Source of the DNA: Saccostrea cucullata
Taxonomy: Eukaryota
Direction of reading: 5' to 3'
DNA: 64,000 nt
Assembly: GCF_032062105.1 (NCBI RefSeq)
Contig: NW_026939106.1
Span: forward strand, 1 to 64,000
This document shows positions 21,715 to 62,590 of this stretch, one piece after another. Below the pieces are notes generated by a model that saw only the letters and a list, made by a program, of their open reading frames with translations, was not told the origin of the DNA and made no database searches. Each line of letters starts with the position of its first letter. Position 1 is the first letter of the stretch. A program made the position numbers and the translations under genes.

Positions 21715-21883
21715 CTGAGATATGCAGGGACATTTCGGAACAAGGACCGTAACGGATTTTATCGATAACAATCGCTTGATTGGACTGGAGGTCCTGTAAA
21801 CAACCCTATACCAAATTGATTATCATAAGTCATGGGTCAACTTGTGATCAATAATAGGTGTTTATGTCTAAAGTGAGACGATA
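21715..21883. promoter_or_regulatory. Probable compact bidirectional promoter between the TRIM gene (-) and the Hv-like gene (+)
   Basis: A minus-strand donor (CAG|GTAAG, exon end 21715) and a plus-strand ATG..AG|GTAAG (21883-21900) lie less than 200 bp apart. CCAAT/ATTGG motifs at about 21612, 21651 and 21779. Confidence 0.45.
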
Positions 21884-24800
21884 TGGGAAGAGATGAAAGG
21901 TAAGAATCGTCTATTTTTTTTCACTGTAGGAATTTTTCAAATGTTTATCGAGATGTGGTTAATTGATTAGAAATTGATCTATTGTTTGTATGGCCAGGTA
22001 AGGAAAAAAAAGGTAAGATTTCATTATCGACGCCGATTCACGTGGATACTGACTAAACATCACCAACTTTATAATCTTGTGACAATCTGACAACGTGGTA
22101 TTACTGTCGTACAACTAATTACTTTCTTTAGAAGTCTGTGTATTGCGGGGGAAAATTCCTGTTAAACATTAATGCAAGTTACCAATTTAGAGCCCATTTA
22201 CTGATGGTCGATGTACATCATCAGTTCAAACACTGTTTTCCCTATATCTAGTCACTTGCCATTTATTCAGTGGCAATATTAGTAAAAAAACAGACCATCT
22301 TTGCCTTAGATATTTTTTTCATGCATTTAAACAGGTATTTGTGTTATTCGTCCTTTTGTTGGTTTGTACTACTTGGTAAGCCGACATAATCATCAAGGCA
22401 TTGACATCGTCTTTTTTATGTCCGTGTACCTGTCCTATCGTATGCCACCTGTCAAAGAACAACTACTGTCTGCCTCTTGTGTGTCATTCTACTCCATTGA
22501 TTACCGGTGCCCAGGAGCGAAGTGTAATCGGCACAGAAACAAATTTGTCCCGTTACACACGGTTCACCGTTATTTATTTGAAAGATTTATCCCACCAGAA
22601 AATATACCGATTTTGGGATGTTATTTTTAATACGTGTCTTCGTAACAGCTGGATGAGATAATCGTTATACACCACTAAGACGCTTTCAATTTCAGTTTCG
22701 AATGGCTACATTTCATCTATGCATGTAATACATTTAAACATTATTTTTATCGTTTCACCGATCTTACTAAGATGGACAGATTCTCTCAATTATTAGATTG
22801 AAATTTCATGTATTAAAAAGATTGATTTGACCAAACGTTAATTGCCTAAAAGACGCGCAGTTTCAAAGAATCGTATTTCCTTTAAACTTCGACATGTACA
22901 TAGCGTAGATTGGCACCGGTCTTGTTTTAGTGTTTCTTGTAGAATCAGATCTTGTAAATTATCATCAGGAACAACGTTTAAAAAGATTTTCCTCCTATAG
23001 GTAGACTTAATAGAGCTTTGTATTCAACACAAGGATGAAGGTTCCCTTCAAACATGCAAAATTAATGAAAAACATCAAGAACTTGCTTCCAGGTCGGCCA
23101 CGGACATAAGTGAACATTTTATTGTATTTGTTATTCATCTGACGAAAAACAATTAAAATCAAAATCAAAAGTAGTAATGATACAGGAACTTTACTGAATT
23201 TTAAGAAATTCGCTGTTTCTTTTTCCTGAAAAGAAAAACTAAGTTACGCATGAATACAAAGGTGTAAAATAAGGACAGTACACCGCAATTACTGCAACCT
23301 TGCTATATGGGATGTTAAGGTGTGATTAAATATTTATCATTATTATGCTTCCTGTCAGTTTGTCTCTATATAACCCATACCCTACTATTCTCGCATAGTG
23401 GTCTAAGGATTTATATAGCGTAAGCATACTATGCCGAAATAGTGCACGGCTTTATTTACTGAATAAAATTCTTCTATGCACATGCCGGGGATCGAACTGA
23501 CGACCATGAGATTGTCAGTCCGATGCCTTATCAATTACGTCATAGAGACGATCACTGATTGGTATAATTTTATGAAATATATAAACTTAATTTATACAAT
23601 TGACACAAGAAGGAGAAAATAGACAAATATTATTTGAAAACAGTTATATTATTCTAAGGAACTTTAGATTAATGTGTACAACAAACTTTCAAACTAATTA
23701 CATACAGATCGTTAGATGAACTGATTTTATAGGGTCATTAAAACGCTTTTTTATATGACGCTTGATTGAAGGATGTAAAAGAAAATTATCAATGAGAATC
23801 GACGTCTGCAAACAAATAAGGCTTACGAACAAAACAGAAAATAAAGATGCGTTGCTTTGGGACAGAAAATCCCGACTTATTTAGAGAAAATACTAGTAAC
23901 CAAAATAACTAAGCATGCAAACAATTTTAGCATGAATATTTTGAATTAGTTCTTGCAGGTGCGCTGTTTAAGCACCGATATTTTCAGGAAAAAGTCAAAT
24001 AGATTGCCGCATAAATAATTAACAGTCAGCATAATAATAACAATAGTGTTGCATTATGCATGTACTATGCCTAAATAGTAGGCAGGGTTTGACACATAGT
24101 GCACTCGCCTCCGGCTCGTGCACCATGTGTCAAACCCTGTTATTTAGGCATAGTACATGCATAATGCAAATATTATATAAATAGTGTTTAATGCGTAAAA
24201 AGATGCAGTGTCCTTGCAAGTAATTTTTTTTTTCAATTTACTTGTTAGTTATTGTTTTAAAATAAAAAAAAATCAGGATTCCACAGGAGTATACCATTAA
24301 GTTTATAAATTCAAACCTTGCTTTCGTTCAAGAATTTTTTTTTTTTGAAGACCACGCCTGCTATCATATTGAACTATGAAAAGGTGGATTCAAATAATTG
24401 TTTGCATTTGTATAAGTACTCTGATCTCGATGTGAATCTACTGTTTTTATTGTAGCTTAATCGTGAACTTTTGACCTCTGAAATTGTATTTAATTTACCC
24501 TGTAGCAAAGTTGTTTAATTTTCAGTAAGATTTCTTTTCTATTGGAGAAGAAGTTAGAACTATGAATTCAAAAATGCATGACAAGCGATAGACAGACAAA
24601 CCAACAATATCTCAAAATGCCATACTGGATATATATAGGTCCTTCTTACATATCATTTCTGAAAAATTAAGACTTGGCCCATATAATTTTAAAGAAACAG
24701 CCTATTCGATATAGCAAGTCTCATTTTTTGAAAAGCATTATGCGATAAATTCCGAACTTTACCCACTATACCCGGATTCTGTCGTTATAAAGGCACATGC

Positions 24801-25091
24801 CCCCTCCTTATGATGCAACGAACTCGGTATCAGCGCACGCTGATGTGTCAATATTGACTTGAGATAAAGGATTACATAGTAGGCGGGATGATTGCCCGGT
24901 AGGTCTCTATAATCTCCGCAAATTAATGAGCATTGACTTTTTTCTTTTAAATTTATGATGATTTAGTATATTCCATGTGTGTAAAAAAAAACAACAACGC
25001 TCGTGCCTTAATGAACAGAGAGACCATTTGCATGCACTGTGATACGGGTATGTGGGGATGATGTGGCACACTTAGTTCACTTTCTTACACG

Positions 25092-25130
<39 letters not shown>

Positions 25131-28100
25131 AGATTACCCGTTGTTCGCCGTCCGTCCGTCTGTCTGTCTGTCCGTCCGTCTGTAAACTTTTTACATTTTT
25201 AACTTCTCAATTTTAACCAAATCGGTACAATGCATCCTTGGGTGAAGAGGAGTTGAAGTTGTTAAAATAAAGGGCCAAGTCCACTTACTAGGGGAGATAA
25301 TCAAGAAAAGTAGGGTTGGTTCAAAAAAAAATCTTCTCAAGAACCAATGGGCCAGAAAAGCTGACACTTACGTGAAAGCATCCTGGAGTAGTGTAAATTG
25401 TTTAAATCATGACCCCCAGGGGGCCACAATAGGGAATCCAAGTTTTGCATTGAAACATATAGGGGAAAAATCTTCTTCAGAACCATTGGACTAGAAAAGC
25501 TGAAAGTTATGTAGAAGCATTTTGAGGTAGTGTATATTTTAAATTGTTTCAGTCAAGACCTCTGAGGGTAGGGTGGGGTCACAATAGGTATCACAAGGGG
25601 GAAATCTGGTAAAGATTGGCTAAAGTGTTACTCAGGTGAGTGATGTGGCCCATGGGCCTCTTGTTCCTCAGTGGAACACACCTTAATTAATTAACAAAGC
25701 TCCTTAAAATATGGAACACGTCGTAAGGTTTGAAAATTGAAATTTTTATATAAATTTTGTAGTTTTATCTTCAGTAACTCTGTAAATATTTTTAAATAAG
25801 GAAAGAAAAAAATAGAATGTGTCTATCAAATGATAATATAAATTTTCTCTGTCTATGAAATTGGATGATAAATTGAAAGACAAATTTCCATACAATATTC
25901 AATACTTGGTATGATTAAATACTTTTATGTTACTGGTATAACGTCAGTATGAGTTGTTAATTATCTTGATTATCTAAATATATATCTTTTAAGGTTTTTT
26001 AGGAAACCCAACTTCGATTTAGGAACGGTGCACTTTTATCAAAGGTGTTACTACGTTTACTTCTTATAGCCATTCCTAAAGGTTCTTCCGTTTCGTCTGA
26101 ACACAAGAATCCATGGGATTTTGTCCTTTTATCGTAGTGTTTTTAGTGTGATTAGTTTTCTATATTTCCTTACTCATTGCCAAGTATAAACAAAAGCCTT
26201 TCCTCTTTCATTTCGCAAAGTTTGCATATCAGAAATTCAGGAATATTAGTTTTCCTTGCGTAAACAGGAATTTCGCCTAATATACACTATTACACCTCAA
26301 TTTTTTCTTTGATAAAAATTGTTTAATGAAGTGTTTATTGAATTAATCAATGTGGAAACGATACAGCACAGCAAGTTCGATTTTTTTTTGTTCTAATTCA
26401 AATCTTTTTTATTTTCTTACTGAACCATAAAAAGCAAACACGTTATAATCTCAGCATACCATTGCATATAAATATTTCATTCATGTGTATATTGATCCCT
26501 GGGTGAAAAATATTGTGACAGTCCTTTAAGGGTGCTGGGTGGTGCTGGGTACCCTGAAAAGAATCAGGGGCAGTAAGCATATATGAGCTGCCCAATATTT
26601 TTAAAAAATTTTTTACACCAGTGCTATCGTTAAGTTGGTTTATTTTTCATATAATGATATGTCCAGTTTGATGTAAATAGCAATAAAATTTTCAACATTT
26701 GATTTGTAGTTGAGTTATCACGATGTGAAGTTGTGTGATTTTTCCGGAATTGAGAAATTTCCATCAAATTCTCACATTCCAAAGAAGATTTAGATATGGC
26801 CGCATGAAAACAACAGAGTAAAAATTTGATAGATTGTTTAAAATGACATAATAAATTATATCCCAAAATATCATTCTGTTGTTCGCATGCGGCCACCCTG
26901 AAAAATATAAAAAACGATGTTTTTTGAGGCCGATTTTGATCGCTTCCGGTTTCGGTTTTTATATTCAGACGTAAACAAAGTTGGAGGAAACAGAAAATGT
27001 GACAGTAGATTTATCGAAGTTCTAACCATTTAACAGGTAGGGATGAATTGAAAGTCAGAGTAATTGTAATTTTACATCCACTACTTACATGCACTGTTCA
27101 AAATTAAATCCCCTCCAAAACTTATTAATGATAAAAGATTCGACATGACAGACTCCGCGAACTCCATGAACTCGGGGGGACGGTAATCAATGCATGTCAA
27201 ACAGTTGAAAATATGTATTTAAAATATATTAAACAGGAACACAACATGCTATCTTCTTTCAAATAAAAACTAAATTATAAAAAGTTGACTTATTCATCGA
27301 TTTCTCTTTGATTTAGGCCCGAATATTCATGATTCATGAACCCTCGATCGGCCGGTTGATCTGCATGATTAGCCGCGTTTTATCAGTTGTGAAAATCTTT
27401 ACATATACGGCATTAAAATATAAATATACTACATTTCTATGTTGGTGTTTATTACATATTTTTCTGTCTGAGTACAAATACAACCGAGTCTAGCGTTTGT
27501 GTATTCAAGAGACCTTACCCTGGTACCTGTGTACTTTGTGTAAATGTATGGTGTGCTATAACAGTCAAAAATAAAAAAAAATTGTAAGAGTTTTTTTTTT
27601 TTTTTTTTTTTTTTGTTGCAGAGACATATAAAACCATTGTAAATACAAAACCATGGTTTTATATGTCTCTGGTTGTTGTAAAACCGTTAAAGAAATAAAA
27701 AAAATTAGTTTCTTAAAAATAAGCTAACATCACTAAATCTAATTAATGTTCTTTGCAGAATAAATAATAATTATAAATAAAATTCTTTCTATTTTTCTTG
27801 TGGGAACAATGTATTTTTTGTTGTTTTTTAAACCAATTAATTAAAATATTATTAACGTAAAATTAAACTTTTGTAAGTATTAAAAAAAATAATTAGATTA
27901 CCAAGGAATATTTCAAATTCATTTAAGTCACCATTTAGATGAAAAAAAAATGTTTGTCATTACAAGGTTCATCTTTTTTGTTTTAATTTAAAGTACACAA
28001 TAATGTCTTTGCCTCTGATTTTATTCATTAAACTCAAATAGGTAAATCAATAAAACTGCTATTTAAATTGATTTCTTGAATGAAATAATTATATATTATA

Positions 28101-31100
28101 CCTGGTAATATTAATACATGATTCCCTTTTTTCATATATAAAGAAAATCTTATGCAAATGTATATACACTGTACAAGTAACCCCCCCCCCTCCGTCCATA
28201 GTTATAGACAAAATGTGCATACATAACATATATAGTAATTTAATTTTGATATTCATATTTTAATTGTAGGATATGCCTGGAGATGGTCCAAAACAATATC
28301 CTGTTACTGGAGCTGTTACTTGTTGGTATTGTCAGTGCCGTGCCCATGTGGCCTCAATATTGTGGTTTCTTGGCTATGAAAGACACACAAACTTTGCAGT
28401 AAGACCTACTCAAGACTAGGCAGACTACCTTGATGCAGCTGTGCTTCCTGCAGTAATGGATGGCTCATCAGAAAGTGAAATGGGTGCAACGGAAGAGTGA
28501 CATGAATTGCAACATTGGTTTATTGAGAGTGAACATTATTGAGAGTGAACATTCTGCAGATTATAGGCGTCTCCATATGTGTGAAAATTATCGAGAGGGA
28601 TGTTAAACAATATACAATCAATCAATCAATCTGCAAGTTATGATATCCACTGCATTAGGCTCCCATTGTTGTTTTCAACAATATAGTGGAAGGCTGTGTA
28701 TATATTGTTATTTATTAATTGTAAATAGGGATTTTTATGTATCTATGATTTTTTTTGTGTTTAAATTGTGATTTCTTAACATCTGTTATATAATCGAGAA
28801 ATTAAAATATAGTACATTGTACATCCCAAAAACATATTAGATTCATTGCATGAGTTTAACAAGTTCGGTTGTAAATATTGAAAGATTAATTATGTACATT
28901 GACAAATGAAATGATTTGTTATTATCATATGATTATTCTTCATGAATAATTGTTATCAAAATTAATATACTGATGTAAAATACATAATGCATCACAAAAT
29001 GTTTCTCAGATAATAGTAACAATTATAGTTTATTACGCAGCGTGTTTATTTGCATATTGAACTTTGTTAATAATTAACATGACTATATACAAGTACTTGT
29101 TATTTTTTGTAATACAATGTAATTACAAAACCTTTCCAGACAAACATGTACTAGTATAACTAATTCTTTGATACTTAGTTCATTTTTATGACATTGTGAG
29201 GATGATAAACATTATCTTATTATGAGTAAATGTAGTGTATAAGGCATGAGTGGTGTGATGTTAAACTTCTATGATCTTTTTGGTAAAAGTATAGGTGGGT
29301 GATGGTAGTTCTGGAATTTGTTTATGCAAACTGAAATCTCTTATTGTTATTTTTGTCAAGTTTTATGAATTGTTATTAAAAATGTTAGTTGAATACATTT
29401 CTTGTTTGTTCACTTTGTGCATTCAATGTATTTTTATGTTAAATACATAACAAGCAAATTCAAAGAATTGTGGTGCCCCGCTTTCGGTGTCTTTGTGAGT
29501 GAGATGTTATTTTTTCTGACATATTATGTCTAATATGAACACCATATCATATGTAATTTATTTAGTAATTATCATTGAAATTGATTTTTTTGAAGGATGA
29601 AAACCCTAATCCTGACCGTTAAAAACTTATGGCCAAAGTGAAAGTTTTAAAAGTAGGTCAACTCCAAGGTCAAGATCAAAGGGTCAAAGTTGTTGATATC
29701 CAATGAAAGGTCTTCTCACAAGGATTACGTATGTGAAGTATGAAAGTCCTAGCCATTACCGTTCAAAAGTTATGGTCAAGGTTAAAGTTTATTCATAAGT
29801 ACGTAAATCTTTAAGGTCAAGGTCAAAGTTGTTGATATCCAATTAAAGCTCCTGCCACAAAGAATATATATGTGAAATATGAAAGTCTTATTATCTACCG
29901 TTCAAGAGTTGTGACCAAAGTTAAAGATTTTTAAAAGTAGTGAAAACTCCAATGTCAAGGTCAAAGGGTGAAAGTTGTTAGTATCCAATGAAAGGTCTTC
30001 TCAAAGGATTACATATGTGAAGTAGAAAGCCCTAGCTCTCACATTTCAAAAGCTATGGTCAAGGTTAAAGTTTATTCATAAGTACGTAAATCTCAAAGGT
30101 CAAGGTCAAAAGGTAAAGGTTGTTGGTATCCAATGAAAGGTCTTGACTCAAAGAATACATATGTGAAAAATAAATTCCTAGTATCTACTGTTTAAAAGTT
30201 GTGACCAAGGTTAAAGTTTAAAAAGTAGTTAAAACTCCAAGGTCAAGGGGTAAAAGTTGTTGGTATCCAATGGAAGGTCTTTTTACAAGGATTACATATG
30301 TGAAGTACGAAAGCCTTAGTCCTCACCGTTCAAAAGTAATGGTCAAGGTTAAAGTTTTTTCATAAGTACGTGGAACTCCATGGTCAAGGTCAAAAGGTCA
30401 AGGTTGTTGGTATCCATTGAAAGGTCTTGCCACAAAGAATACATATGTAAAATATGAAAGTCCTAGTACCTACTATTCAAAAGTTATGGCCAAAGTTAAG
30501 TTTGGAATTTTTGTGTAAAAGTGGGTTAAACTCAAAGGTCAAGGTCAAATGGTCAAATTTGGTGGTACCCAAAGAAAGGTCTTGTAATAAGGAATACACA
30601 TGTGTAATATGAAAGTCATAACTCCGCTAAATCAAAAGTTATGGGCAAGGTTAAAGTCTTTGTGACTGACAGACTTACAGACTGACAGACAGATGAATAA
30701 GATTTAATGTACCCCCGCTTTCGCGAAAACTGGGGACAAAAACAACTGTTTTACATTCAAATCTGTTATTTCACCACTTTTAGCTAAAAAAAATAGTTTC
30801 TATTCACATGTTTAAGATCATTTCTGTTGTATTTGTATTAAACATCCATCTTTTATTTCTTTAATCATATTTACAGGGAAAAAATATTATTAAGAATTTC
30901 CAGAAATCAGTGAAAATAGTGTTATTTTTGTATTGACCCCCAAATGTCTTAATAGTGGTTTTTTCATCAAAATATGTCTAAAAAGGTGTGATTCAATCAT
31001 AATTCTTTTAATATTTATAATATTTTGTCCATTATGGTTGGGGCATATTTAGGGTCTTAATGCCCCTGATTCTTTCACCTGAAATTTTTTAGCACAAAAT

Positions 31101-34100
31101 GCAAATTATTAAGTAAAAAAAAAAAATCGCTTGCTATAATATTTATTTTTTATGCACTTTTGTGTACTATCAATTAAAATGATAAAGACCTTCATTTCCA
31201 GGAGGTTTTAAAAATAGTCTAAAAAATGGAAATTACCGCCAGGCCCTCTTGATTAATGATAAAACAGTTTTATTGCAGTTTTATCGAGATACGTAAACAT
31301 GTACATGTACTTCCGATCTTTTTATCGAGTTTTTAAATAGAGTAAAATGTAAGACAAGGACACGACAATGACTAACATTAATTTCAATGGAAAACTAAGA
31401 CATTTCAATCAAAGATTTTTTTTTTAATTTAAGATAACACTTTAGGTTTACACATTCACATCGCATCGTACTTCTTAAAAGTGATAAGTGATGATAAATT
31501 AAAATTTGAATTTATGATGTATGACTTAGGAAGTCTCATGGCAGCGATTATTGTTCCCCGCTCCCCACAACCAGGGAATATTAATTAAGATACGTTCGTC
31601 CGTCTATCTGTAGAATATAACAAATCGTCATGTATAGATTTATCTAGCAAAAGGCATTGAATACAACATTGAAAAAAATATCCAGCTGAGTTGTTTTTTT
31701 GTTTTTTGTTGTTGTTGTTTTTTTTTTTTATATACAAGAAACATGATTTTGGTATAACGTGTTATTAACAATTTGAAATACTATCAAATACCTCTCATAA
31801 TATAATTTATTTTGTTTATTTTTTTTTTAATTTCACAGCACGAATTGCATGGAGGCCCACGCCTTTCTAAATGGCCTGTGTATGGAATGTTACGTCACAT
31901 TGCTCACCATTCTAGACATCCTCTGCATCACCACAGAGCTCGTCATTAGACTGGGAATAATTAAAGGTATATGTTTAAGGGGGGACCTATGTCGTTCTAC
32001 GTCAAAGCAGCGTTATGTGACGTCACAATAGCGACGTTTGATTTTACCTGACTTTTTCAACTGGGATATAGACATAACATGGTTAATAATCAATAACGTA
32101 CACAATTCAAAAGAAAAAAAGAAACTAGATTCATCATTAATAACAGTTTTATTTAATTTATGGATGTTGTTGAAATCAGAATTCCCTTCCTTTGGGTTGA
32201 TAATTCATAGCAATTTCATTTGTGAAGAAATGCCTAGATGATATGCTGATATAAAAGTGCAAAAAGATAAAATTCAGCAAAGAAAGCGGCTTAAATCAGG
32301 GAAATATGTTTAATTTTATGTTTATCATTAATTGTATTTTCTGGACAAAACTAAGAAAAAGATTAAGAAAGGTATTTGTGCCAATATTTGCTTAATGATT
32401 TATAGAACATGTAGATTTTATTGTATAAAGCCATTCCTAGGTTCTAATAGGTGTTGGTTGTTGACGGGGAAATGGGGGGGGGGGCGGAATAATTGGAATG
32501 AAGAAGAAAAGAATTAAACTGTTTGAATTGTTTCTAATCAAAACAAAATACTTGTTTTTCGCAAAATAGTTTTATATTCAGATGTTTGTCAGTGCTTAGT
32601 TACCTTTTTGTAGTGCAGAAAGGTCAATATATATGACACAGGAGTACGAAAATAAAAGAAAACGTCATATTTCTCGTTTATTTGATCATAAAGGTATACT
32701 TTTTTCTTTGTTGAAATAAAGATATGAATCAGTTCTTTCAAAAAATATGAATTACAGTATTTTCACACAAAGACTTTTTAAGATATTACCTATTATGCAT
32801 GTCGGAATTGTAAAATATACGACAAGAAAAACGGGGTGATACTTACATTGTGCTCCATTATAATTTTTTATGCGAGATGAATTACAATGAATTTGCCTTC
32901 ATTTTAAAGATACAAGTCATATAAATTAAATACCTGTTGATTTTGAATGTGATTTGAATTTTTGTTTCTTTTTAGCGCATATTCAGGGTAGAACAATAAT
33001 GTCTGAAAATAATCTATTTTTAGCATTTCACAGTGTTTTTGCACGTGCTCCTGTGTAAAAATAAGCACATAAAGGTATTGTTTTTAATACCTAAAAATTA
33101 AGAGCAAGTGGTCAGGAAAGAAATGTCAAAGTTTTGAAAATTTCACACAAAGACTTTTCGGACATAGGTCCCCCCTTTTGTTTGTTGTTTAACGTTCCTC
33201 TCGACAATATTTCACTCATATGGAGACGCCACCACTTGCTGATGGAGAGCTTGTTTTGTCATACACTTAGGGCCATTGAGCAGTACGGGATCCTTTTTCG
33301 TGCTTGAACCTACTGCGACACGGGACTTCGGTTTATACGGTCTCATCCGAAGGACCGGTCTCCGCGTCCCACGTAGGGATTCGAACCCGCGACGTAAGGT
33401 TCAACTCCTTACTTGGCGAGTCTAAAGCAGACACTCTAACCACTTTGTGACTCTAGAGCAGACACTTTAACCACTTCGCACTCTAACCACTTCGCCACGC
33501 GGACGAATAATATTCTAATGAAACATGGCCAATGGATGGTGTGAACTTATAAACAAGAACCTCACGCTACCTTTCTCCATATATTATTCATGAGTTGAAA
33601 CCATATGCAAATTAATGGCTGTTTGCACCCAACCGGGTGTCATATCTTTCATCTGATCAGACTTTCAGTATAGTTAACCGTCAGTTTTGTTGTGTATTAA
33701 AGCTTGGTCCATCGGGAACAACTGCTCTAGCTAGAAGTCAATATTGTTAAATTATGTTCAATCTCATTTTTAGAACGGAGGCTTAGTCAATTAATGTATT
33801 GATAGACACCTCTCTCTCCCTCCCGATTTGAAATTTGACAAGTAAATTTAGAGTAGTATCCATAGTAGATCTTAAAGGGGCAAATTGAGAGAAAAAAATG
33901 TCAGCACTTGATATGGCATTCCAAGATATTCTTAAACCAATATGGCAGATTTCTCAAATATTATTTAGAATATGCATTTAAAAATGAAAACAATTGTTAT
34001 CATAGATACTAGTATAAGAACAAAAATTAATTATCATTAACTGTTTAAAACTCGATCAGTGCATGTTTTCAAGTGAGGTCATTCCAAATTTATTTTGTGT

Positions 34101-37100
34101 TTAACGTCCGCGTGCTTGGCATGATTTTTGATAGGCTAGATCTGGAAGAAAAAAAAAACAAACAAACAAAATCAGGTATCTTCAAATTAATTCTTTCTGT
34201 CAAAATATTGTGTCATTTTTTTCCCTTTATTTCTCTATATATATCTGACATATTTGGTACATATTAAGCGTTCGAAACCTTGATTTTCCTAAGACATAAA
34301 CTGATCTATGAGAAAAGCAGATCAATGAAATCAAATCATTGGATTGACGTCATTTTTTAAATTATAAAGTCTATGCTTTGGTTTTTGTTGGGGTTTATCT
34401 ATTTATTTTTGAACTGGTAGGTACATGTAGGTACTAGTACTTCAAAGATGAGGAGTGGACACTACACAGAGGATAAAATTGGAATGGCCTAGAAACAAAC
34501 TCAGTGATACAGAGGCGAGATATGTAATGATACAAAAGTGCACATTTAGTGATATGAAAATACATGCATATCGTCTAAATATCAAACATAATTGCATGGA
34601 GCGGAAGATCTCGTGATTTAATAGTCAAAAAGAGGAGACTTGCATAACAAAATAATTAAAATTTACGTGGACGTAAATGGTATGGAAAATGTCGCATTTC
34701 CTTTGCGAAAATTATCCTAATGTGAACACACAGCCATGATAAAAAATAAAAAAATGTTTCATTTATTATTAGAAAGATGTCGGTTATAATACATGTATAT
34801 GGCATTACGAATCGTGTACTGCTTCACAAGCTAAGATTTTAAGAACTGAATAAATTCTAGAAAATGTGAGATCAAGTACTCCTTAAATTCATATATATTT
34901 TAAAGATTTGAGCAAATAAACTTTCTTTAGATACGAGTATTGCAGCTATTCATCCTTATCTTTTGCAAAATGGTTCATAACTACATGCTAATGTACATGC
35001 ACATGAATTTACTTGAATTTACATGGGCCTTTCAACCACTCTTGAATTGTTTTGCAACCACTCTTGAATTGTTGACAACTACCTAAGAAGCACAAAATCT
35101 CTTAGGTATTATAATGGACATATTTCATGTAGTTTAACAATTGATGGAAATTTGGAGGTATGCATCTATATATGCACATGCAATTGTAACATTGTAAATT
35201 GTAACATTATTCACGGGTGTATGTTAAGCTTTATTGCCATCTTGCACTTATAAATATACTTAGCATATTCTTAAGTCACAACTTTGCTAATTGCCATACA
35301 TGTTGTAAATTCTGAATTTACCTGGTGGCAGTAAATACGAAATTTACATGTCACAGCTGAAGTTAATAACAATTTTATCAATATCAATAGACCCACACGC
35401 CGATCCTACGGAGAGCCCTCTGGTGTCCAGTCTCAATGTGACCACTGAAACTTACAATCCAGATCCAGGCGGAACGTGCCAGCAGTGCTCCATGGAAACC
35501 TCTCTAGATATCGCACACTGCGTGGTGCATTACTCCAGCGTCACCATCTCATGTGTATTCATGATTGAGGTGAGTAGTTTTAAAAATACTCTGAAAATTT
35601 GTGATTTTCATATTTTTTAAGTATGTCATTTGTAAGCCTTACATTGACTTTGACTCAACCTATTCAAGTTAGAATACGTTGTTCTAATTACCTCCAAACA
35701 TTTTAGTCAAAGACTTAGACTTAAGCTATGCAAGCTATGCAAGAGCATGCTCTACGTATGAACAATTTCTAAAACGAGGTAAATTATTGACAAACAAGTT
35801 GATTAAACAAGAATATCAGTAGTCTCGTTTAAATCATCATTTTGTAAATTCTATGCTCGCTGCAATGACCTTGTCAGCAAATACATTATCGTTGAGTCAA
35901 ATGCTGACTAACGTATTTCATACTTATTGTCAGTCCATTATTTATACACTGAATTGACAACTGATTTTTCTGTTATTTCCCGATCATAATAAGTAGCACA
36001 CGGCTGGTATGACCGGTCGGCAGGGGTTGCTCACTCCCCCATGGCATCTGATCCCACCTCTGATGTTTTGGAGGTCCGTGTTTGCTCTGCTCCTATTTTG
36101 TATATTGTTTAATGGACTTTTGATCTTGGATACTGTTCTTAATCTCCATATGTGCTATTTTTCTCCAAGTTACATTTAGTCAGTGACTTAGATTTAAGTT
36201 ACTCAAGTAAGACTACTGTGTCCACTTCTTCTCCAAGACATGTCTCAGTACGTTAGTGACTTAGACTTAAATTAATCAAGTAAGAGTACAAGGTTACATT
36301 CTTTCTAAGTCATATTTCAGTCAGAGACTTACTTAGACTTATGCTATTCAAGCAAATTTTAAAACCATGGTTATCTTTTGAAAATTTCCGACTGGAATAT
36401 GAGGTTAAATCACTGGCGGAATGATTAAACCTCATTTTCCAGTCGGAAATGATTCACTCGAGTATTTAAGTCTGGAATAATTTAACCGAACATTCCAGCT
36501 AGATTCATCTTGACTTTTTCAATCTGCATTTATTTCTGGATTGATTAAACCAGTCTTGACAGAATTCATCGAGTTTTTCAGTATGTTAAATATTTTTTTG
36601 TAGATATTTCGAGACTCTCTGGATAACACTGTATTAATCTCTTTAAAGTTGTCTTTTGTTCCCTGAACGATAGCTTATTGACATGCTAGGATCTTAGAAA
36701 TACCTGGTACTTTATACTAGATAATCTAAACAACCCAGTCATATGAATCAGGATTATATTTCACAAAACTTCTGAATCTGATACATGAGATTTTTACTCC
36801 TGCAAATCGATTTGACCCGGTACAAAGAATATTACATGTACACCCATGTCTTTTACTTTTGTGCAAAAGATAACCATGGTTTTCAAAATTTGCTTTTTAA
36901 GCCGCCGAGGCCGAAAAATTTCGCATTGTCTCATCATGCTCAGATTTCAAAGTGCATGTTTATAATCATTCAATATTACTCCAATTCTTCAAAGGACGCC
37001 AATAAACTTTTCATAATTCTTGTGATGCGATTAAAAAGAAATTGAAAAAACATATTCCTTTAATATTCGAGAGGGGGAAAAGGGGTATGATAAATTCTAT

Positions 37101-40100
37101 AAAAATTAAATGTTGAATACTTTATGGCTAAAAAAAGGTGGAGATGGGAATACATGTTGTAAATAATTTTTTTTTGCCATGAGCTAAATTATGTTTTTCT
37201 TTCACGTAAAGGTGGTGGCACGGGTTGTTGCTGGATGTCCAGGCTGCTGGAAAGATGTTCTTAACGTAAGTTTGTTTTCTTCATCTAGCTTGTCCTGTTT
37301 AGGAATAAAATCTTCAAAAGATGAAATACTTCTTAATACACCGATTCAAAGTATCCAAACTTTGGAACATGACCATTAAATGTTCTGGGTTATTTTTTCT
37401 TCTCTTTCTAGCTATTAGTCTAGATAATAAAAAAGCGCCCAAATAATCCAATATTAATATACTAGTATTCAATAAATGCGGCTTTTTAAGTTGTGTGTGT
37501 GTGTGTTATGGGTGGCATTTTGCTACAATGTGCAATTAACATGAACACCATAATATAAATACGTACATATATGAGTAAAGTCTTGTTTTAAGGCACCGCG
37601 TACAGTTATTTACAAGGTATCGGTGGTCAAAATGGGCGAGGTCCGACCGTCAGACAGCTTTTTATTACGGACAATAAACACTGTAAACGATAATAAAACG
37701 ATAATGCCAAAAAAACAATACATAACTTACGTTCAGACATTTATTGTTATCCGATTTCACTGTTCCGGCATTCAGTGGTATATAATGATTACCAAAAAAT
37801 GTATATGAAGCTTTAGAAATACTAGTATATATATGTTCCAAGGCCTTATCACTGTTATTAATTCATCATTCAAATCTTTCCAGTTGTAATTAAATGACGC
37901 AATTTTTCCTTTTTTGTCTCTTTCACATAAAGCCATTTTTGTTGTAAGAATTTAGCCATGTGGAATACTGATTGTAGACACACGGAAAACTAAATCTAAA
38001 TCCTTTGAAGTAGTTTCAGATAAGTTTGCTCTGATGGACAGTCACTCGTTGTTCATTATAGTACAATTCTCAGTTAACCTTGGACTTTCAGTAAGGCGTG
38101 GTATTCTCGACGTTACAGAATAGCGTTTGAAATTTACACAGCCTTTTATTCACTGTTGAAATATACATTCCGGCGAATGTCAACGAGTGTATCAATGAAC
38201 CAATGATATCGTTTCTTACGGCAGAGAGGTTAGGCTTAAGTCGTCTCATCGTTGTCAACAACAATTTTAAAGTTGCTGATGTTATTAATTTCTTAACCAA
38301 TGAGAATCTATTCGCCATTTAGAGACGTTAATTACGTAGTGTCGAGAAAGTCACCCTACTGAAAGTCCAAGGTTAACTGAGAATCGTACTATCACACGAA
38401 CAAAATATATTTACACATTGTTTGAAAGGTGCGAAAAAAATGAGACGCGGTCGATGGGGCATGCTTATCCCTAAATGGTACCTGATCCCATCTCTGATAT
38501 TTTTAAAGGTCCGAGTTTGCTTTGCGCCCAATTTGTATTATTTCAGTTGACTTTTGAGACTGATTACTCTTCAATATCTCAAAATTTCATTTTAACCTAT
38601 GACAATACAATTGCTCCAATTTAACATCTTTTTTAATTTGTACGCTTTTTCTTTCAATTCTTACTCATGTTGTTTTATTTTCAGGTTTTTGATGGTTTTG
38701 TTGTACTATCTGTCTGTTCTATGGAAGTTCTGTTTACCGTGTTTTGGAATGACGTCATCTGTTACCACGTGGCAGTAGAGGCAGCCACTTATGTGGTGGC
38801 TCTTCGCTTTCTCCGAATTCCAAGAGCTTGCAGTGGTAAAGATATGCTAAAGTTATAATGCTAGATAAGAACTAATGGTTTCTTCATCACTAGGTTTGTG
38901 GACAGAAATCGTTATCCTGTATTTATTTTAAATGGGTATATAATTTTTTTTTCGCTTCAGTTCGAAAGAGAATTTATGCGGAACGATTAGAAAACGAAAT
39001 GCACTACTTAAGGAAGGCAAAATCTAAATCAGAAGAGCATTCAAGGGAGCTTGCCACAAAACTAAAACGCCAACAGGTAAATATCCTTTGAAGTAGTCGA
39101 TACGATACATTGAATTAATGTGGGTACAACATGGTTAGCTTTCATTTTTTCGCCGTGTTGCATTAAATTTAATTTGGATTGCTGTACATTTATTTTCAGA
39201 AAGAAATACTAGAATTACAAAACCGACTATCAACAGCATCGATGGACTATACACATGAAAATATATCATCTATATCAATCAGCGATTTAAGTAGGAATTT
39301 TCCTGTCATCTTTAATTGTTGCAATTAATACTGGTATATTAAAGTAAAAAAGTCTACAAACGGCAACCGATTTTTGAATAAAAGTTAATTTTTCTGATTA
39401 AATTACTATTTTAATTTCCCTTTTGTGATAGGTATTCCTCAGATAAGTAATGGAACCTTGCCTAACGGGTTCCACACCACCTCACTTGATGAGCTAGACT
39501 CTGTTACGTCATCAATTACTGCTGCCAAACAAGCTGATCTTACAGACACCAAAGAAAACGGCCCAAAGGAATCGGCTTCAAGACAGAGTAGTGTGCAATA
39601 TAATTCCCTTCTCAGTGAAATTAACTCAAAACGAGATGAAATTAATAAAAAGAGTCTCAAACTAAAACCGGGTCACTCCCGAAACACGTCTCCAAAGAAA
39701 GAGGCAAATGATCACGAAGTGATCTACTCCAACGCACATGAGACTACTTACATGAACACTTCCGGTATGTATGACGGTTGTGGCGGGAGTTACCATGACA
39801 GTAATGCAACTGACATTGTGTACCAGTTGGATAAAATCATTAGAGACAATCAGTCGAATGGCACGGTATCCGCCATTAGGGATTCTGCGCAGTCCGCACA
39901 GTCTGTGGAAACGGATGATGATGAAGCACTCCTTATAAGAAGTGAGAGTCGTACCGAGTTTACATCGGATGTCTGTTTTGTTGCTTGATTATTGTATTTT
40001 TAAAACACATAAGCATATTCATATGCTAATTATACACGAATTTAATGATAAATCAAAGCACCATGAAAAATTGTGTATCCTGTAACAACTTAGGCATTTT

Positions 40101-41193
40101 TCAAGATGTCCGCATTTTTGTCTCCTGCAATTGGACGATTTTTTTTCTATTGTATTTTCAGGAAGTTATGGTGCTAAATCTGGTTCCCATGTTCGAGCCT
40201 CGTTTGCAGGAAGAGAGAATAAAGCGTTTAGTTACGGAGACAAGACTAGGGCTTCGTTTACAACTGCCCGCGAAAGTAGAACCAGTTTTCATCCTGGACC
40301 TGAGGTTAACGAAGTAGTCAAAATGAGAAATCTAGAAGTAATGGCTGAGTATGAGGGAACAAGAACGTACCGTAGTGCTGTAAGTTAATTTTGTTTCTTA
40401 TTCAGTAGGTCGTTAATATCAGGGATGTAGCATCGTTTTTGAAGGGGGGGGGGCGAAAAGACAAAAAATCTTGAAAAGCAAAAGAAAAGGGGGATTTCCT
40501 AAACTCGAAAATCCTTAAATTTATATTATCCTATTGCATAGGAGGGAGGGGTGGTAACCGGACTTTCAATGAACAAAGTTATGTCTGGAAATAAGTGGAT
40601 GGGGGCAACCGGACTCTCAAGAGCCTCTACTCTATAGAGTGGATCCGTACATCGCGGATACGAATCCCGTTGCGGGACGTGAAGACCGATCTTTCGGGTG
40701 TGAACCTAGATCTGTGTAGCTGTAAGTGCTAGCACAAAAAAATTCCTCGCTGCTCAGTGCCCTCAACTGCCAAGTATTTGTAAACTGCATTCTTCCATCG
40801 GCATGTGGTAGCGTATCCATGTGAATAAAAAAAAATCCCAAGAGGAACATTAAACAACAACAAAAAAATGAGAGAGAGAGAGAGAGAGGTGGATCTAGAA
40901 TAATTTTGTTACGTGGTGTCAAGAATTGACAACAAGTACCCCAAAACTCAAAAAACATTATTTCCTGTCATAATAATATTATTTATTTTGTGTTTGTACT
41001 CGGAACCACATGCTTGGTATTAGCTCTTCCATTTATGGTTTTTTAGGGGTATAAATGGTCATTTTGGGATGTACTGGAAGCCTTGGTAACTCGGAAATGT
41101 AAATATATGTTTCGTTAATCTACCTTAATATACTAGTATATGTTAATTCTTTTTTTCTTTTTTCAGGAGGGCATTCCACTTACAGACCTTTAG
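21883..41193 (+). CDS. Divergent voltage-gated proton channel Hv1/TMEM266-family voltage-sensor-domain protein, 496 aa
   Basis: Ten phase-consistent exons: 21883-21899, 31839-31966, 35391-35569, 37212-37265, 38685-38835, 38961-39076, 39200-39290, 39432-39941, 40162-40379 and 41167-41193 (1491 nt). S1 LTILDILCITTELVI, S2 VHYSSVTISCVFMIE, S3 VFDGFVVLS, S4 ALRFLRIPR, followed by a coiled coil and a long low-complexity tail. Exon 1 and the exon-8 donor are the least certain parts. Confidence 0.85.
23483..23545 (-). pseudogene. Degenerate tRNA-like sequence / tRNA-derived SINE head
   Basis: Reverse strand reads ..aattgataaggcatcggactgacaatctcatggtcgtcagttcgatccccggc, with a T-loop-like GTTCGATCCC and a GAC anticodon-like loop. 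Acceptor stem is poor. Confidence 0.4.
24049..24169. repeat. Imperfect long palindrome (MITE-type)
   Basis: TTGCATTATGCATGTACTATGCCTAAATA..CAGGGTTTGACACAT / ATGTGTCAAACCCTG..TATTTAGGCATAGTACATGCATAATGCAA around a CTCGCCTCCGGCTCG core. Confidence 0.85.
25092..25665 (-). mobile_element. HINE-like element (reverse orientation)
   Basis: ttttagctcacctgagctgaaagctcaagtgagct hairpin, (GTCC/GTCT)n, and tcaggtgagtgatgtggcccatgggcctcttgtt end. Confidence 0.8.
27619..27671. mobile_element. Minimal MITE remnant (TIRs only)
   Basis: CAGAGACATATAAAACCAT ... ATGGTTTTATATGTCTCTG with a ~15-nt spacer. Confidence 0.65.
28270..28500 (+). pseudogene. Transposase C-terminal SWIM-like zinc-finger relic
   Basis: One frame reads ..WYCQCRAHVASILWFLGYERH..QD*ADYLDAA. 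This resembles the WYCxC(x)nCxHVASxLWxLG motif of DNA-transposon proteins, with an internal deletion and a stop. Confidence 0.6.
29449..30742 (+). mobile_element. Helentron-associated/pearl-like element with internal ~140-147-bp satellite array
   Basis: aacaagcaaattcaaagaattg head, about seven monomers starting near 29621, 29765, 29904, 30048, 30194, 30332 and 30479, a GACA tract and a terminal hairpin cccccgc..gggga. Confidence 0.8.
31979..33175. mobile_element. Non-autonomous TTAA-targeting DNA transposon (Kolobok-like)
   Basis: TTAA|GGGGGGACCTATGTC ... GACATAGGTCCCCCC|TT. The right target site is interrupted by a SINE. Confidence 0.75.
33176..33502 (-). mobile_element. tRNA-derived SINE (Nin-like core)
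   Basis: B-box GGTTCGAATCC (reverse of about 33377-33387) and A-box-like TGGCGAAGTGGTTAGAG. Core shared with 11097-11373. Confidence 0.8.
35734..36150 (+). mobile_element. Truncated Penelope-like retroelement (RT C-terminal relic plus downstream UTR/pLTR)
   Basis: Translates YARACSTYEQFLKRGKLLTNKLIKQEYQ*SRL..FYARCNDLVSKY..QMLTNVFHT, a PLE RT thumb-like sequence. It is followed by a gaccggtcggcagggg..ctgatcccacctctg..ggtccgtgtttg segment also seen at about 38450-38560 (+) and 50200-50295 (-). Confidence 0.7.
36361..36883. mobile_element. MITE
   Basis: TIRs AAAACCATGGTTATCTTTTG / CAAAAGATAACCATGGTTTT. Confidence 0.8.
38059..38391. mobile_element. MITE
   Basis: TIRs TAGTACAATTCTCAGTTAACCTTGGACTTTCAGTA / TACTGAAAGTCCAAGGTTAACTGAGAATCGTACTA. 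Second copy at about 17248-17574. Confidence 0.85.
40650..40830 (+). mobile_element. Degenerate SINE (Nin-like core)
   Basis: Degenerate B-box (ggatacgaatccc) followed by gaccgatctttcgggtgtgaacc..gcacaaaaaaattcctcgctgctca, the reverse complement of the other SINE cores. Confidence 0.5.
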
Positions 41194-49307: not shown

Positions 49308-52300
49308 TTATATTGTATTTAAAAACCAACTAGGATTTCCATCTTCGTCTAGATCTGGTATCATATATCGCTTGCCTTTAAAAGCAAACATGGATGCACT
49401 AAATTTGTTTTGTGTCGATGTTGGCTGTCCGAAGTCTTCAGTTATAGTCTCTGAACTTACTGCCGGTGCCAGCAGAGGTCTAGTCTCAGATGGTTCGGAC
49501 CACGACTGTCTCTCCCCAGATGCAAAAATTCCATAAAAGACAACCCCCGCTAAATGAATGGAAGCGGCAATGGTGAATAGTAATTGCCAAGATTCGATAT
49601 TCTGTTGAAGAAAAATGGTAAACGTACATTTACAATGTTAATGATTGCATTGAATTTTCTTTCAATTCGAACACTACCTCTAGCAGACTGTATATATTGA
49701 TACATGTATATAAGTTTCCCATACAAAGTCTTTCTTGAATTTTAAAAATAACATTACCGGTTCTGCTAACTTCCCTGCCACAGCCGTACTGAGAATGGCG
49801 CCCAGGGTTCCAAGTCGAGAGAGGCCCGTTAAAATGCTGACGTACTGCGGGGCGAGATCCAGAGGGTTTACTTGATAACCAGAAATGGCTAATCCACTGA
49901 AACCCACCCCTACACACAACAGTACGAGGGCTACCTCATCACTGTTTACAAATCGTAGCCCTAACAGACAGAAAGCCTCTATTCCAAACCCTAGAATAGA
50001 CGGACGGAAAAAATAGTAAAAAGTCATGTGATGATATGTATTTTCCATAAGTGTACGAAGCGGAATAATTATAGTAGCAGAGACCTTCTAAAAGGGTTAG
50101 TGTCTCTGAATTACATATATATACTTGCAATCATGTTTATCATGAGATATATAGAGATACTGAGCAATATTCAAAAGTCCATTCAAACAATACAAACCAG
50201 GAGCACACCAAACACGGACCTCTAAAACATCAGACTTTGGATCCGATGCCATGAAGGAGTGAGCATCCCCTGCCGACCACTCACTTCAACCGTGTGCTCA
50301 GACTATTCTTAAAGAACTTTCCCCCTGTTTTAACATTAAAAGGTTTTATTAGACTAACCCATGCACTGTGCTAGTTTTCTTCCATGAGTTGTGGACACTA
50401 GATGGTGTTTTATCAGTTTATCGATTAGAACACCTCCCGAAATCGTCACTATTGTCATCAAGACTTCCGGTAACGCTGCTGTGAATCCAATCTATGAAAA
50501 AAATAAGAAATTGAGGTTTTTCTCTTATGCGTATTTTATGCGTACAAAAAGCTCTAAAATACGTTCGGTATATAGATTTTCATCTACATGGATACCCCGA
50601 GAAGCTTTATATTATTAATTTGTTGGTGATACAGCTGATACATGTGTTACAGTCAACTAGGCGATGACACACTCTCTGTTCACCAGCATTCTTTCAACAA
50701 ATTCGTACTTGGGCCTCTGCCTCGAAAAGAATGTCTTAGTTTCATATTTATGTCCCAGATAAAATTTCATACTTCTGAATCTTATTACGGAGGTAAATTA
50801 TTAAATACAAAATGTGATTTTAAAATCTGGAACACAGGTGTAACGTAGATCTATAAATGTTTTTTTAAAAATGTAATTTCTGCAAAAAATGAAAGGGATA
50901 AATCTCCAGACGAAGACTTTTTATAAAAAGACGTGTAGACAAAATGACGAGAAGGATAGTTCATTTAAACCTTAGCTTAGTTTTCAAAAAGGCAGGGGAC
51001 AGGGTGAGTGTTAAGGAGGAGGTTTCAAGTAAAGTGTGACAGATGAACGAAAGTGATTTATAAATTTCTTGAAGGTAATTACGAACTCACTGTAGCAATA
51101 TCCTTCTTGAAGGCATCCTTGAAGTATTGTGGAACCTGTGTTATCATCATAGAAAAAATCCAGTTTCGACAAAAACTTCCAAGAATGATGGCCCATACTG
51201 GTAAAGATCGTAAAATTTTGGTCCAAGGAATCTCCCTTGCCTAAAATAGCACGGATAATTTTTTAGTGTATTAAGTTTCGTATAAGGTACACACCCTACT
51301 TGTGGTAAAAATAAGTAGGGGGTGTACCGTATACGAAACAAGTACCTGTGATTAGGAATCATCAATTACATAATTATATGAACAAACTTTGATAAAAATT
51401 TATGACTTGTTTTTGGAATTAAATCAAATTTACCACACTCTGGGATCCTCTGGCAATATTAGCTCCTTCTCTTGCAAACAATTCCGCTTCTGAATGGTGC
51501 AAACTTGGGTGGAGACCAGGAGTATCGTAAATTGCACACACCCATACAACGGACCAAATGAAACCTATTCCACCTACAAACATTTGAACAAAAGAAATAC
51601 TTGAACAACCATACGATGACCCTCTTTACGTTTTTAATTTTTTTATGCTTTTATTTTATTTTGACAATTTGAGCAACTTATGCATGTTTAAAAGTTTTCA
51701 CGTTTTTGTATGAAATTTTAATCTAATTTTATACTTGAAAGCAACACTGTGAATTTTTTTTATACAACAATTGTTTCTAAATGAAATATACATATATATA
51801 TTGCTCCAACTTAAAAGTACGAGATAATTAAAACTCAGAGTACTCCAAAACATGTACGAGTTGTGCATTATTAGTTATCCAGGTTCAATCAAGGGTGTAC
51901 GGGGATTTACCCCGAGTTGTATTCCATACTCCCTTCGGCCGATTTACCCTGGGTTTTATTCCATACACCCTGAGGCCGAAGTTTTACCCGGGGTAAATCC
52001 CCGTACACCCTTGATTGGACCTGGATAACGAATTTATTTCCTATGTACCCAAATAATTCTTAATAAAACTGCGTATCAAGCTATCGATATAAGATTTACT
52101 ACATCCTTCAATGCATATAGTGACGTCCTGTTATTTGCTTTCTATCATAGAAAAACAATGCATTGTGACGTCATGTTTTTTACCCCCCAGCTGAAGTCGG
52201 GTGTACGGAATTTTACACCCGACTTTGTAACCAACCAAAGCTCGTATTAGAAGCTAGACAGGAAATAATATATTCAATATTAAGGTGGACCCTCTCAAAG

Positions 52301-62446: not shown

Positions 62447-62539
62447 TATGACTATAACTTTCCTGCGCCAAAGCAGAGATACGACTTTACTCAATGAAAA
62501 ACCTATGGCTTTGCTTGACTGACTACACCGGTGTTGTTT

Positions 62540-62590
62540 GTCTAAACCGGAAGACCGGGTTCTGAGTTGTAGCAATTTGATTGGTTGTTA
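62540..62590 (-). promoter_or_regulatory. Probable PPIB core promoter
   Basis: CCGGAAG (ETS-like) and GATTGG (CCAAT) motifs about 100-140 bp upstream of the ATG. Confidence 0.4.

What the first reader, a model, noticed from the sequence alone, without database searches (positions are those of the whole stretch)
21883..41193. Atypical Hv1/TMEM266-like voltage-sensor protein: selectivity Asp kept, signature S4 Trp lost, Pro in S4
Seen in sequence: the spliced product has a four-helix VSD with no pore domain, then a coiled coil. By manual alignment to human Hv1 it keeps D112 (D32, codon 31915-31917), E119 (E39), H140 (H95), F150 (F105), E153 (E108), D174 (D129), an acidic residue at D185 (E140) and three S4 Arg. 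S4 reads R-F-L-R-I-P-R (38805-38825) rather than RxWRxxR. D123 becomes Arg and N214 becomes Ser. Established knowledge: the S4 Trp is near-invariant in Hv channels and is also present in TMEM266, whereas TMEM266 lacks the S1 Asp. The VFDG S3 start and the long tail here are TMEM266-like, and molluscs are known to carry extra Hv paralogues. Inference: this may be a distinct VSD-only subfamily with altered gating or selectivity, relevant to acid-base handling or calcification.
Basis: partly seen in the sequence, partly recalled or inferred. Interest (0 to 1): 0.85.

Follow-up and report, generated by a model that had tools for sequence, protein, structure and literature searches.

The report
Tryptophan-less proton-channel relative in oysters

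Summary
Observation confirmed. The ten-exon gene (21883-41193, +) translates exactly to RefSeq XP_062590646.1 (Saccostrea cucullata, 496 aa). It is spliced in RNA from three studies and is under purifying selection (dN/dS about 0.05). It encodes a pore-less S1-S4 sensor, a coiled coil, a long tail and a conserved C-terminal P-x-T-x-L motif.

New here: the bivalve orthologues split reciprocally. All 12 pteriomorph sequences keep the S1 Asp and lack the S4 Trp (Cys, Leu or Ile). All 7 clam-type loci keep RxWRxxR/K but carry His at the Asp position. The S4 Pro is shared by both groups, so it is not part of the Trp loss.

The lineage is not wholly unknown. An apparent Aplysia orthologue and large Limulus relatives are listed, untested, in a 2023 review, which also notes another Trp-free Hv-like sequence. 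Asp without Trp is also the state of non-conducting Ci-VSP, so conduction is open: about 0.45 atypical proton channel, 0.35 silent sensor. TMEM266 orthology is plausible but untested. No evidence links it to calcification. The scan had noted this same stretch for its cysteines, and no such gene on other DNA.

The parts
21883..21899 (+). Exon 1 (start codon, isoform X1)
   Evidence: Model equals P0016; orthologue transcript starts alike
24888..24898 (+). Alternative first coding exon (isoform X2)
   Evidence: Matches start of P0017 with GT donor
31839..31966 (+). Exon 2: S0 and S1; D32 (31915-31917), T29, E39, R43; C9, C20, C23
35391..35569 (+). Exon 3: extracellular S1-S2 loop (N-glycan sequon N64; C78, C81, C92) and S2 with H95, F105, E108
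37212..37265 (+). Exon 4 (54 nt): end of S2 and S2-S3 linker, R112, D123, N126 (E171 equivalent lost)
38685..38835 (+). Exon 5: S3 (D129, E140), S3-S4 loop (C152, H154, E158) and S4
38805..38825 (+). S4 motif R167-F-L169-R170-I-P172-R173, Trp replaced by Leu
   Evidence: alignments
38961..39076 (+). Exon 6 (116 nt): coiled coil continuing S4
   Evidence: helix 170-224, pLDDT above 90 for residues 191-224; joints
39200..39290 (+). Exon 7: end of coiled coil, start of tail
39432..39941 (+). Exon 8: polar low-complexity tail, variable between families
40162..40379 (+). Exon 9: tail and first part of the conserved C-terminal motif
41167..41193 (+). Exon 10: C-terminal P-L-T-D-L (class I PDZ-ligand-like) and stop
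   Evidence: joint 40379-41167 seen in raw reads and contigs; conservation

Best explanation
The gene is the single-copy oyster member of an old, long-tailed lineage of Hv-type voltage-sensor-only proteins, separate from Hv1 and Hv3. Shown: it is spliced, conserved, has four helices, no pore domain, a coiled coil and a conserved C-terminal T-x-L. Inferred: it dimerises through the coiled coil and is held by a PDZ scaffold. S4 (R167/R170/R173) moves past F105, with E108/D129 as inner and D32/E39/E140 as outer counter-charges. In pteriomorphs the D32-Arg pair still passes protons. Without the Trp latch it should open fast and at more negative voltages, with weakened pH-gradient gating and leaky selectivity above external pH 8, close to seawater pH. 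A probable C78-C152 disulfide would tie the S1-S2 loop to the S3-S4 paddle and could stand in for part of the lost restraint.
For: D32 is invariant in 11 aligned pteriomorph proteins plus Tegillarca although the core falls to 47-50% identity. E140 keeps an acid where the literature calls D185 unique to Hv1. F105, E108, D129, R167, R170 are invariant in 16 bivalves. Human W207A/S/F mutants still conduct, open about 100-fold faster and more negatively, and lose selectivity only above pHo 8 (PMC4621752; PMC10875263). AcHv3 conducts protons despite a damaged S4 motif (PMC10911540). Large Limulus relatives keep an S1 Glu and the Trp. Clams fixed a titratable His rather than drifting, which suggests a working aqueous path (inference). 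dN/dS about 0.05 against a Pacific-oyster-type orthologue.
Against: No current has been measured. Ci-VSP has the same Asp, no Trp, and carries no proton current (PMC10686229). Orthologues in clams lack the Asp, so proton selectivity is not the conserved core of the lineage. The E171 equivalent is N/Q in most members and R3 is Lys in mussels and ark clam. The disulfide rests on co-conservation only.
Confidence: 0.45

Rival explanations
1. Non-conducting voltage sensor, TMEM266- or VSP-like: S4 moves and signals through the coiled coil and PDZ-anchored tail; D32 is only a counter-charge that seals the sensor.
For: The residues invariant across all 16 bivalves are the sensor set, not the Asp or the Trp. 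TMEM266 has the same layout (S1-S4, coiled coil, about 250 disordered residues) and no proton current (PMC6392501). Ci-VSP D129 is a seal against anion leak. An amphioxus TMEM266-like protein ends in a similar P-x-T-x-L and one Limulus relative is named TMEM266-like.
Against: All tested Trp mutants of Hv1 still conduct. The Hv-specific second acid is kept. Atlas features rank Hv1 clusters (0.91) above TMEM266 (0.85).
Confidence: 0.35
2. Regulatory or redox/metal-sensing subunit: it works mainly by pairing with other Hv paralogues, or its cysteines and H95/H154 make it a redox- or Zn-tuned sensor.
For: C9, C78, C152, C175 are invariant; C81/C92 are pteriomorph-only; H95 matches the Zn ligand H140. 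The genome holds Hv1 and at least four Hv3 genes.
Against: H154 and C117/C120 are not conserved. No interaction data exist. TMEM266 co-expression with Hv1 was tested in PMC6392501, but I did not read the outcome.
Confidence: 0.1
3. Poorly selective or anion-passing leak pathway rather than a proton channel.
For: Polar T/S at the V109 gasket position in oysters and mussels. D112H gives Cl- current in three Hv1s, which is the clam state.
Against: The oyster protein keeps the acid; neutralising it is what produces anion current.
Confidence: 0.08
4. Decaying gene or mis-spliced reading.
For: Few raw reads on the exons in the one raw-read run.
Against: Intact frame, all tested joints seen in three studies, dN/dS about 0.05, orthologues across bivalves.
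Confidence: 0.01

Closest known systems
Aplysia californica LOC101854637 (XM_013082371), listed as a putative Hv in PMC10377628
   Same: By eye from the supplement text: similar Cys-containing start of S1, Gln at the E171 position, Pro after the second S4 Arg followed by C-N-I-R, similar coiled coil, and the same long C-terminal motif ending G-I-P-M-T-S-L. Apparent orthologue.
   Different: Keeps the Trp. Its S1 filter residue reads Ser in machine-read text that garbles highlighted letters, so it is uncertain. Never characterised.
Large chelicerate/myriapod Hv-like proteins (Limulus LOC106463214 'TMEM266-like', LOC111087200)
   Same: Over 450 aa, long tail ending I-P-M-T-S-L; short motifs in S0, after S1 and in the S2-S3 linker match the scallop orthologue by eye.
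   Different: S1 Glu and intact RLWR; no S4 Pro seen; untested.
Hv1 (HVCN1), Hv2, Hv4
   Same: S1-S4 only, coiled coil, D112/E119/H140/F150/E153/D174/acid-185 and three S4 basic residues.
   Different: No Trp, Pro before R3, D123 is Arg, long tail, 27% core identity to oyster Hv1, five introns in the core against one in oyster Hv1.
Mollusc Hv3 (AcHv3, xPWRxxR)
   Same: Same intron scheme (shown in full for two oyster Hv3 genes, in part for two more), long loops and tail, a Pro in S4.
   Different: Hv3 has Pro before the Trp and lacks R1; this protein keeps R1, lacks Trp and has Pro before R3. 17-20% identity, separate clade.
TMEM266 (C15orf27)
   Same: Architecture: S1-S4, coiled coil, long disordered tail.
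   Different: TMEM266 lacks the S1 Asp and keeps RxWRxxR; reported as vertebrate-restricted. Orthology not tested here.
Ci-VSP sensor domain
   Same: S1 Asp with no S4 Trp; top Foldseek match of the model (4g7v, E 0.026).
   Different: No phosphatase domain here; a coiled coil and acid-185 are present.
Limacina antarctica 'tryptophan-free' Hv-like sequence (PMC10377628)
   Same: S1 Asp kept, S4 Trp lost, untested.
   Different: By eye Hv3-like and without the C-terminal motif, so probably an independent Trp loss.

Membership tests
Hv proton channels | S1-S4 voltage sensor without pore domain | tested here: met
   Four helices then coiled coil; profile best hits Hv1 structures; VSD folds lead the structural list but Z about 12 is not decisive for helical bundles
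Hv proton channels | Acidic selectivity residue in S1 (D112) | tested here: met
   D32; His in clam orthologues
Hv proton channels | S4 signature RxWRxxR/K | tested here: not met
   RFLRIPR; Trp absent in all 12 pteriomorph sequences
Hv proton channels | Second acid in S3 (D185) | tested here: met
   E140, invariant in 16 proteins
Hv proton channels | Proton-selective, pH-gradient-gated current | not testable with these tools
   Needs patch clamp
Mollusc Hv3 | xPWRxxR with R1 missing | tested here: not met
   R1 present, no Trp, Pro elsewhere; separate clade
Mollusc Hv3 | Multi-exon core with 54-nt linker exon and 116-nt coiled-coil exon | tested here: met
   shared, so not diagnostic
Bivalve Hv4 / Hv1 / Hv2 (conventional) | Small protein with RxWRxxR/K | tested here: not met
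   496 aa, no Trp; definition. Hv2 and Hv4 sequences were not in the tree
TMEM266 | No acidic residue at the D112 position, RxWRxxR kept | tested here: not met
   Oyster state is the reverse; the clam state fits this pattern
TMEM266 | Coiled coil followed by long disordered tail | tested here: met
   tail judged by composition and variability
TMEM266 | Phylogenetic grouping with vertebrate TMEM266 | not tested
Voltage-sensing phosphatase | PTEN-like phosphatase after S4 | tested here: not met
   No such Pfam domain

The most novel reading that the evidence does not exclude
One orthologous gene has been tuned in opposite directions in the two large bivalve lineages: a natural Trp-free, fast, low-threshold proton channel in oysters, scallops, mussels and ark clams, and a natural D112H voltage-gated anion-permeable sensor in clams. 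It would be the first wild-type Hv without the signature Trp and the first natural anion-passing Hv-type protein.
Probability: 0.2. Interest if true: 0.85.

Novelty: new variant of a known kind. Interest (0 to 1): 0.58.

Why it matters
The Hv family is recognised by two residues, the S1 Asp and the S4 Trp, and what each does is known from engineered mutants. This gene offers both substitutions as fixed natural states in one orthologous background, each held across whole bivalve lineages. Recording the oyster and clam proteins side by side would test whether the Trp is needed for a proton channel, whether D112H makes an anion channel in nature, and how conducting Hv1 and silent TMEM266-type sensors are related. 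It also shows that motif-based Hv counts can miss or misfile this gene.

Tried and rejected
Single exons gave no relevant Pfam hit, and the single protein gave no significant PDB hit; profiles were needed. Foldseek gave no match below E 0.001 and the atlas shape searches were uninformative. The first metagenome scan found nothing; the second found only clam-type loci. No gastropod, cephalopod, annelid, arthropod or vertebrate relative was returned as a usable sequence, so the tree lacks them. Alignment A4 misplaced C-terminal fragments and was dropped. No second copy of the gene was found in the genome. Rejected: Pro as a mark of the Trp-less form; VFDG or intron positions as TMEM266 markers; reading the Aplysia S1 Ser as certain; pseudogene. 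Searches for the bivalve locus ids found no paper; I could not map their XP numbers to the XM lists of the review, so I cannot exclude that they are among the listed bivalve genes. No paper was found tying this gene to mantle or calcification.
Full report
Observation. The gene lies on the + strand in ten coding exons: 21883-21899, 31839-31966, 35391-35569, 37212-37265, 38685-38835, 38961-39076, 39200-39290, 39432-39941, 40162-40379 and 41167-41193. Joined in a script they give 496 aa with no mismatch to stored protein P0016, RefSeq XP_062590646.1, Saccostrea cucullata LOC134252238, 'uncharacterized'.

Expression and selection. Contigs from three studies of a close Saccostrea relative show all seven joints from exon 3 to exon 10, and four raw reads cross the last joint. 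Two of those runs are only guessed to be RNA, but spliced joints show that the contigs derive from RNA. The S3-S4 exon had no differences over 147 nt in two of them, against about 3% in the other exons. Exons 1-2 were outside the 6,000-letter stretch; an orthologue transcript contig covers them. dN/dS against that orthologue is about 0.05, with dS near saturation, so the value is rough. The gene is single-copy in the assembly.

Anatomy. The AlphaFold model (mean pLDDT 69, pTM 0.51) has an S0 helix, four helices and a continuous S4-coiled-coil helix to residue 224, with no pore helices. A 12-sequence profile matches Hv1 structures best (E 6e-12 and 1e-9), ahead of Ci-VSP. Structure searches put voltage-sensor domains first but not decisively. 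After the coiled coil come about 240 variable polar residues and a conserved end, T-Y-[RK]-S-A-[ED]-G-[IV]-P-x-T-[DE]-L. T-x-L at the C-terminus fits a class I PDZ ligand (own knowledge; binding not tested).

The family. Searching exon 5 and then profiles returned orthologues across bivalves. They form one clade apart from the oyster's own Hv1 and four Hv3 genes (100/99), with long branches flagged by the program. Inside it the two signature residues split cleanly. Pteriomorphs (five oysters, Pinctada, three scallops, Mytilus, a mytilid-like transcript, Tegillarca) have D32; none has the Trp, which is Cys in seven, Leu in three and Ile in two. The eleven aligned proteins also share R43, H95, C81 and C92. 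Clam-type sequences (Mya, Mercenaria, Mactra, Dreissena, one unnamed transcript and two unnamed genomic loci) have His at 32, His at 43, Arg or Gln at 95, and keep R-L-W-[RK]-x-P-R. Invariant in all 16 aligned proteins are E39, Y96, F105, E108, D129, E140, E158, R167, R170 and C9, C78, C152, C175. The Pro is in 14 of 16, so it predates the Trp loss. C78 and C152 lie in the two outer loops and may form a disulfide (inference).

Gene structure. The introns after S1, after the S2 Glu, before S3 and after S4, and the 54-nt and 116-nt exons, recur in oyster Hv3 genes, while oyster Hv1 has its sensor in one exon. From memory, human TMEM266 has the same scheme; I did not test this, and because Hv3 shares it, it would not be diagnostic.

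What is known. The review PMC10377628 counts up to eleven Hv-like genes in scallop and lists Aplysia XM_013082371 among seven putative Aplysia Hv genes. By eye that sequence shares the start of S1, the S4 Pro context and the whole C-terminal motif, so it is the apparent orthologue. It keeps the Trp; its S1 residue is unreadable with confidence because highlighted letters are garbled in the extracted text. The large Limulus proteins, with S1 Glu, intact RLWR and an I-P-M-T-S-L end, share further short motifs with the scallop protein, and an amphioxus TMEM266-like protein ends in P-A-T-A-L. This suggests one old long-tailed lineage that may include TMEM266 (about even odds, untested); Papp et al. 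call TMEM266 vertebrate-restricted. The review also notes a Trp-free, Asp-keeping sequence in Limacina as untested; it looks Hv3-like. I found no paper describing the bivalve gene or the reciprocal split.

Mechanism. With Hv1 and Hv3 as outgroups (both Asp and Trp), the simplest history is an ancestor with both, then loss of Trp in pteriomorphs and of Asp in clams (inference). Human Trp207 mutants conduct, open about 100-fold faster and more negatively, and lose selectivity above pHo 8; smaller side chains shift activation further. That is the predicted behaviour if the oyster protein conducts (0.45). Against this, Ci-VSP has the same Asp without Trp and passes no protons, and the lineage tolerates loss of the Asp, so a silent scaffolded sensor is nearly as likely (0.35). 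D112H gives chloride current in three Hv1s, which makes the clam form as interesting as the oyster form. Nothing here supports or opposes a role in calcification.

Limits and steps left out. Exons were joined only inside scripts. Sequences seen only in the paper's supplement had no reference, so they were compared by eye and left out of the tree; no human sequence was fetched. Hv2, Hv4 and TMEM266 are therefore absent from the phylogeny.

Verdict. Real, expressed and conserved; a new variant of a known kind; fails the Hv signature test yet may work like an Hv. Interest 0.58.

Noticed in passing
P0134-P0138; L011:4350-6591; L052:1459-4136: Clam-type orthologues carry a fixed His at the D112 position with the S4 Trp kept; D112H makes engineered Hv1s chloride-permeable.
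   Followed up: partly
window:31846-31890, 35477-35521, 38760-38762, 38829-38831: Conserved cysteines: C9, C78, C152, C175 in all 16 bivalve proteins; C81/C92 only in pteriomorphs; the C117/C120 pair only in oysters.
   Followed up: partly
positions 43 and 95 (window:31948-31950, 35528-35530): Arg43/His95 in pteriomorphs against His43/Arg95 (Gln in one) in clams: an apparent swap at the outer mouth near the Hv1 zinc site.
   Followed up: no
G000 C7050 (L027), C17333 (L029), C12240 twice (L031, L032): Four Hv3-type genes with xPWRxxR; the first two have Gln at the E119 position; the two on C12240 lie about 25 kb apart.
   Followed up: partly
G000 C6794:8170-8676 and C13551:297061-297567: Canonical Hv1 present twice at 99% identity, probably haplotigs.
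   Followed up: no
window:18286-20673 (-): 796-aa open frame with RING, B-box and a beta-propeller repeat (TRIM-like ligase), divergent from the sensor gene about 1.2 kb upstream of exon 1.
   Followed up: partly
window:45321-45959 (-), 49311-50087 (-), 60880-62587 (-): Exons of an ADP-dependent glucokinase (Pfam), an SLC17-like transporter (by eye only) and a cyclophilin (Pfam).
   Followed up: partly
window:35739-36103 and 38059-38391: Two intronic repeats with very high RNA-contig depth; the second shows opposite-strand joints, as a hairpin element would.
   Followed up: no
P0014, P0015, P0006, P0023: Public gene models lacking the 54-nt exon or with a wrong end; probably annotation errors.
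   Followed up: no
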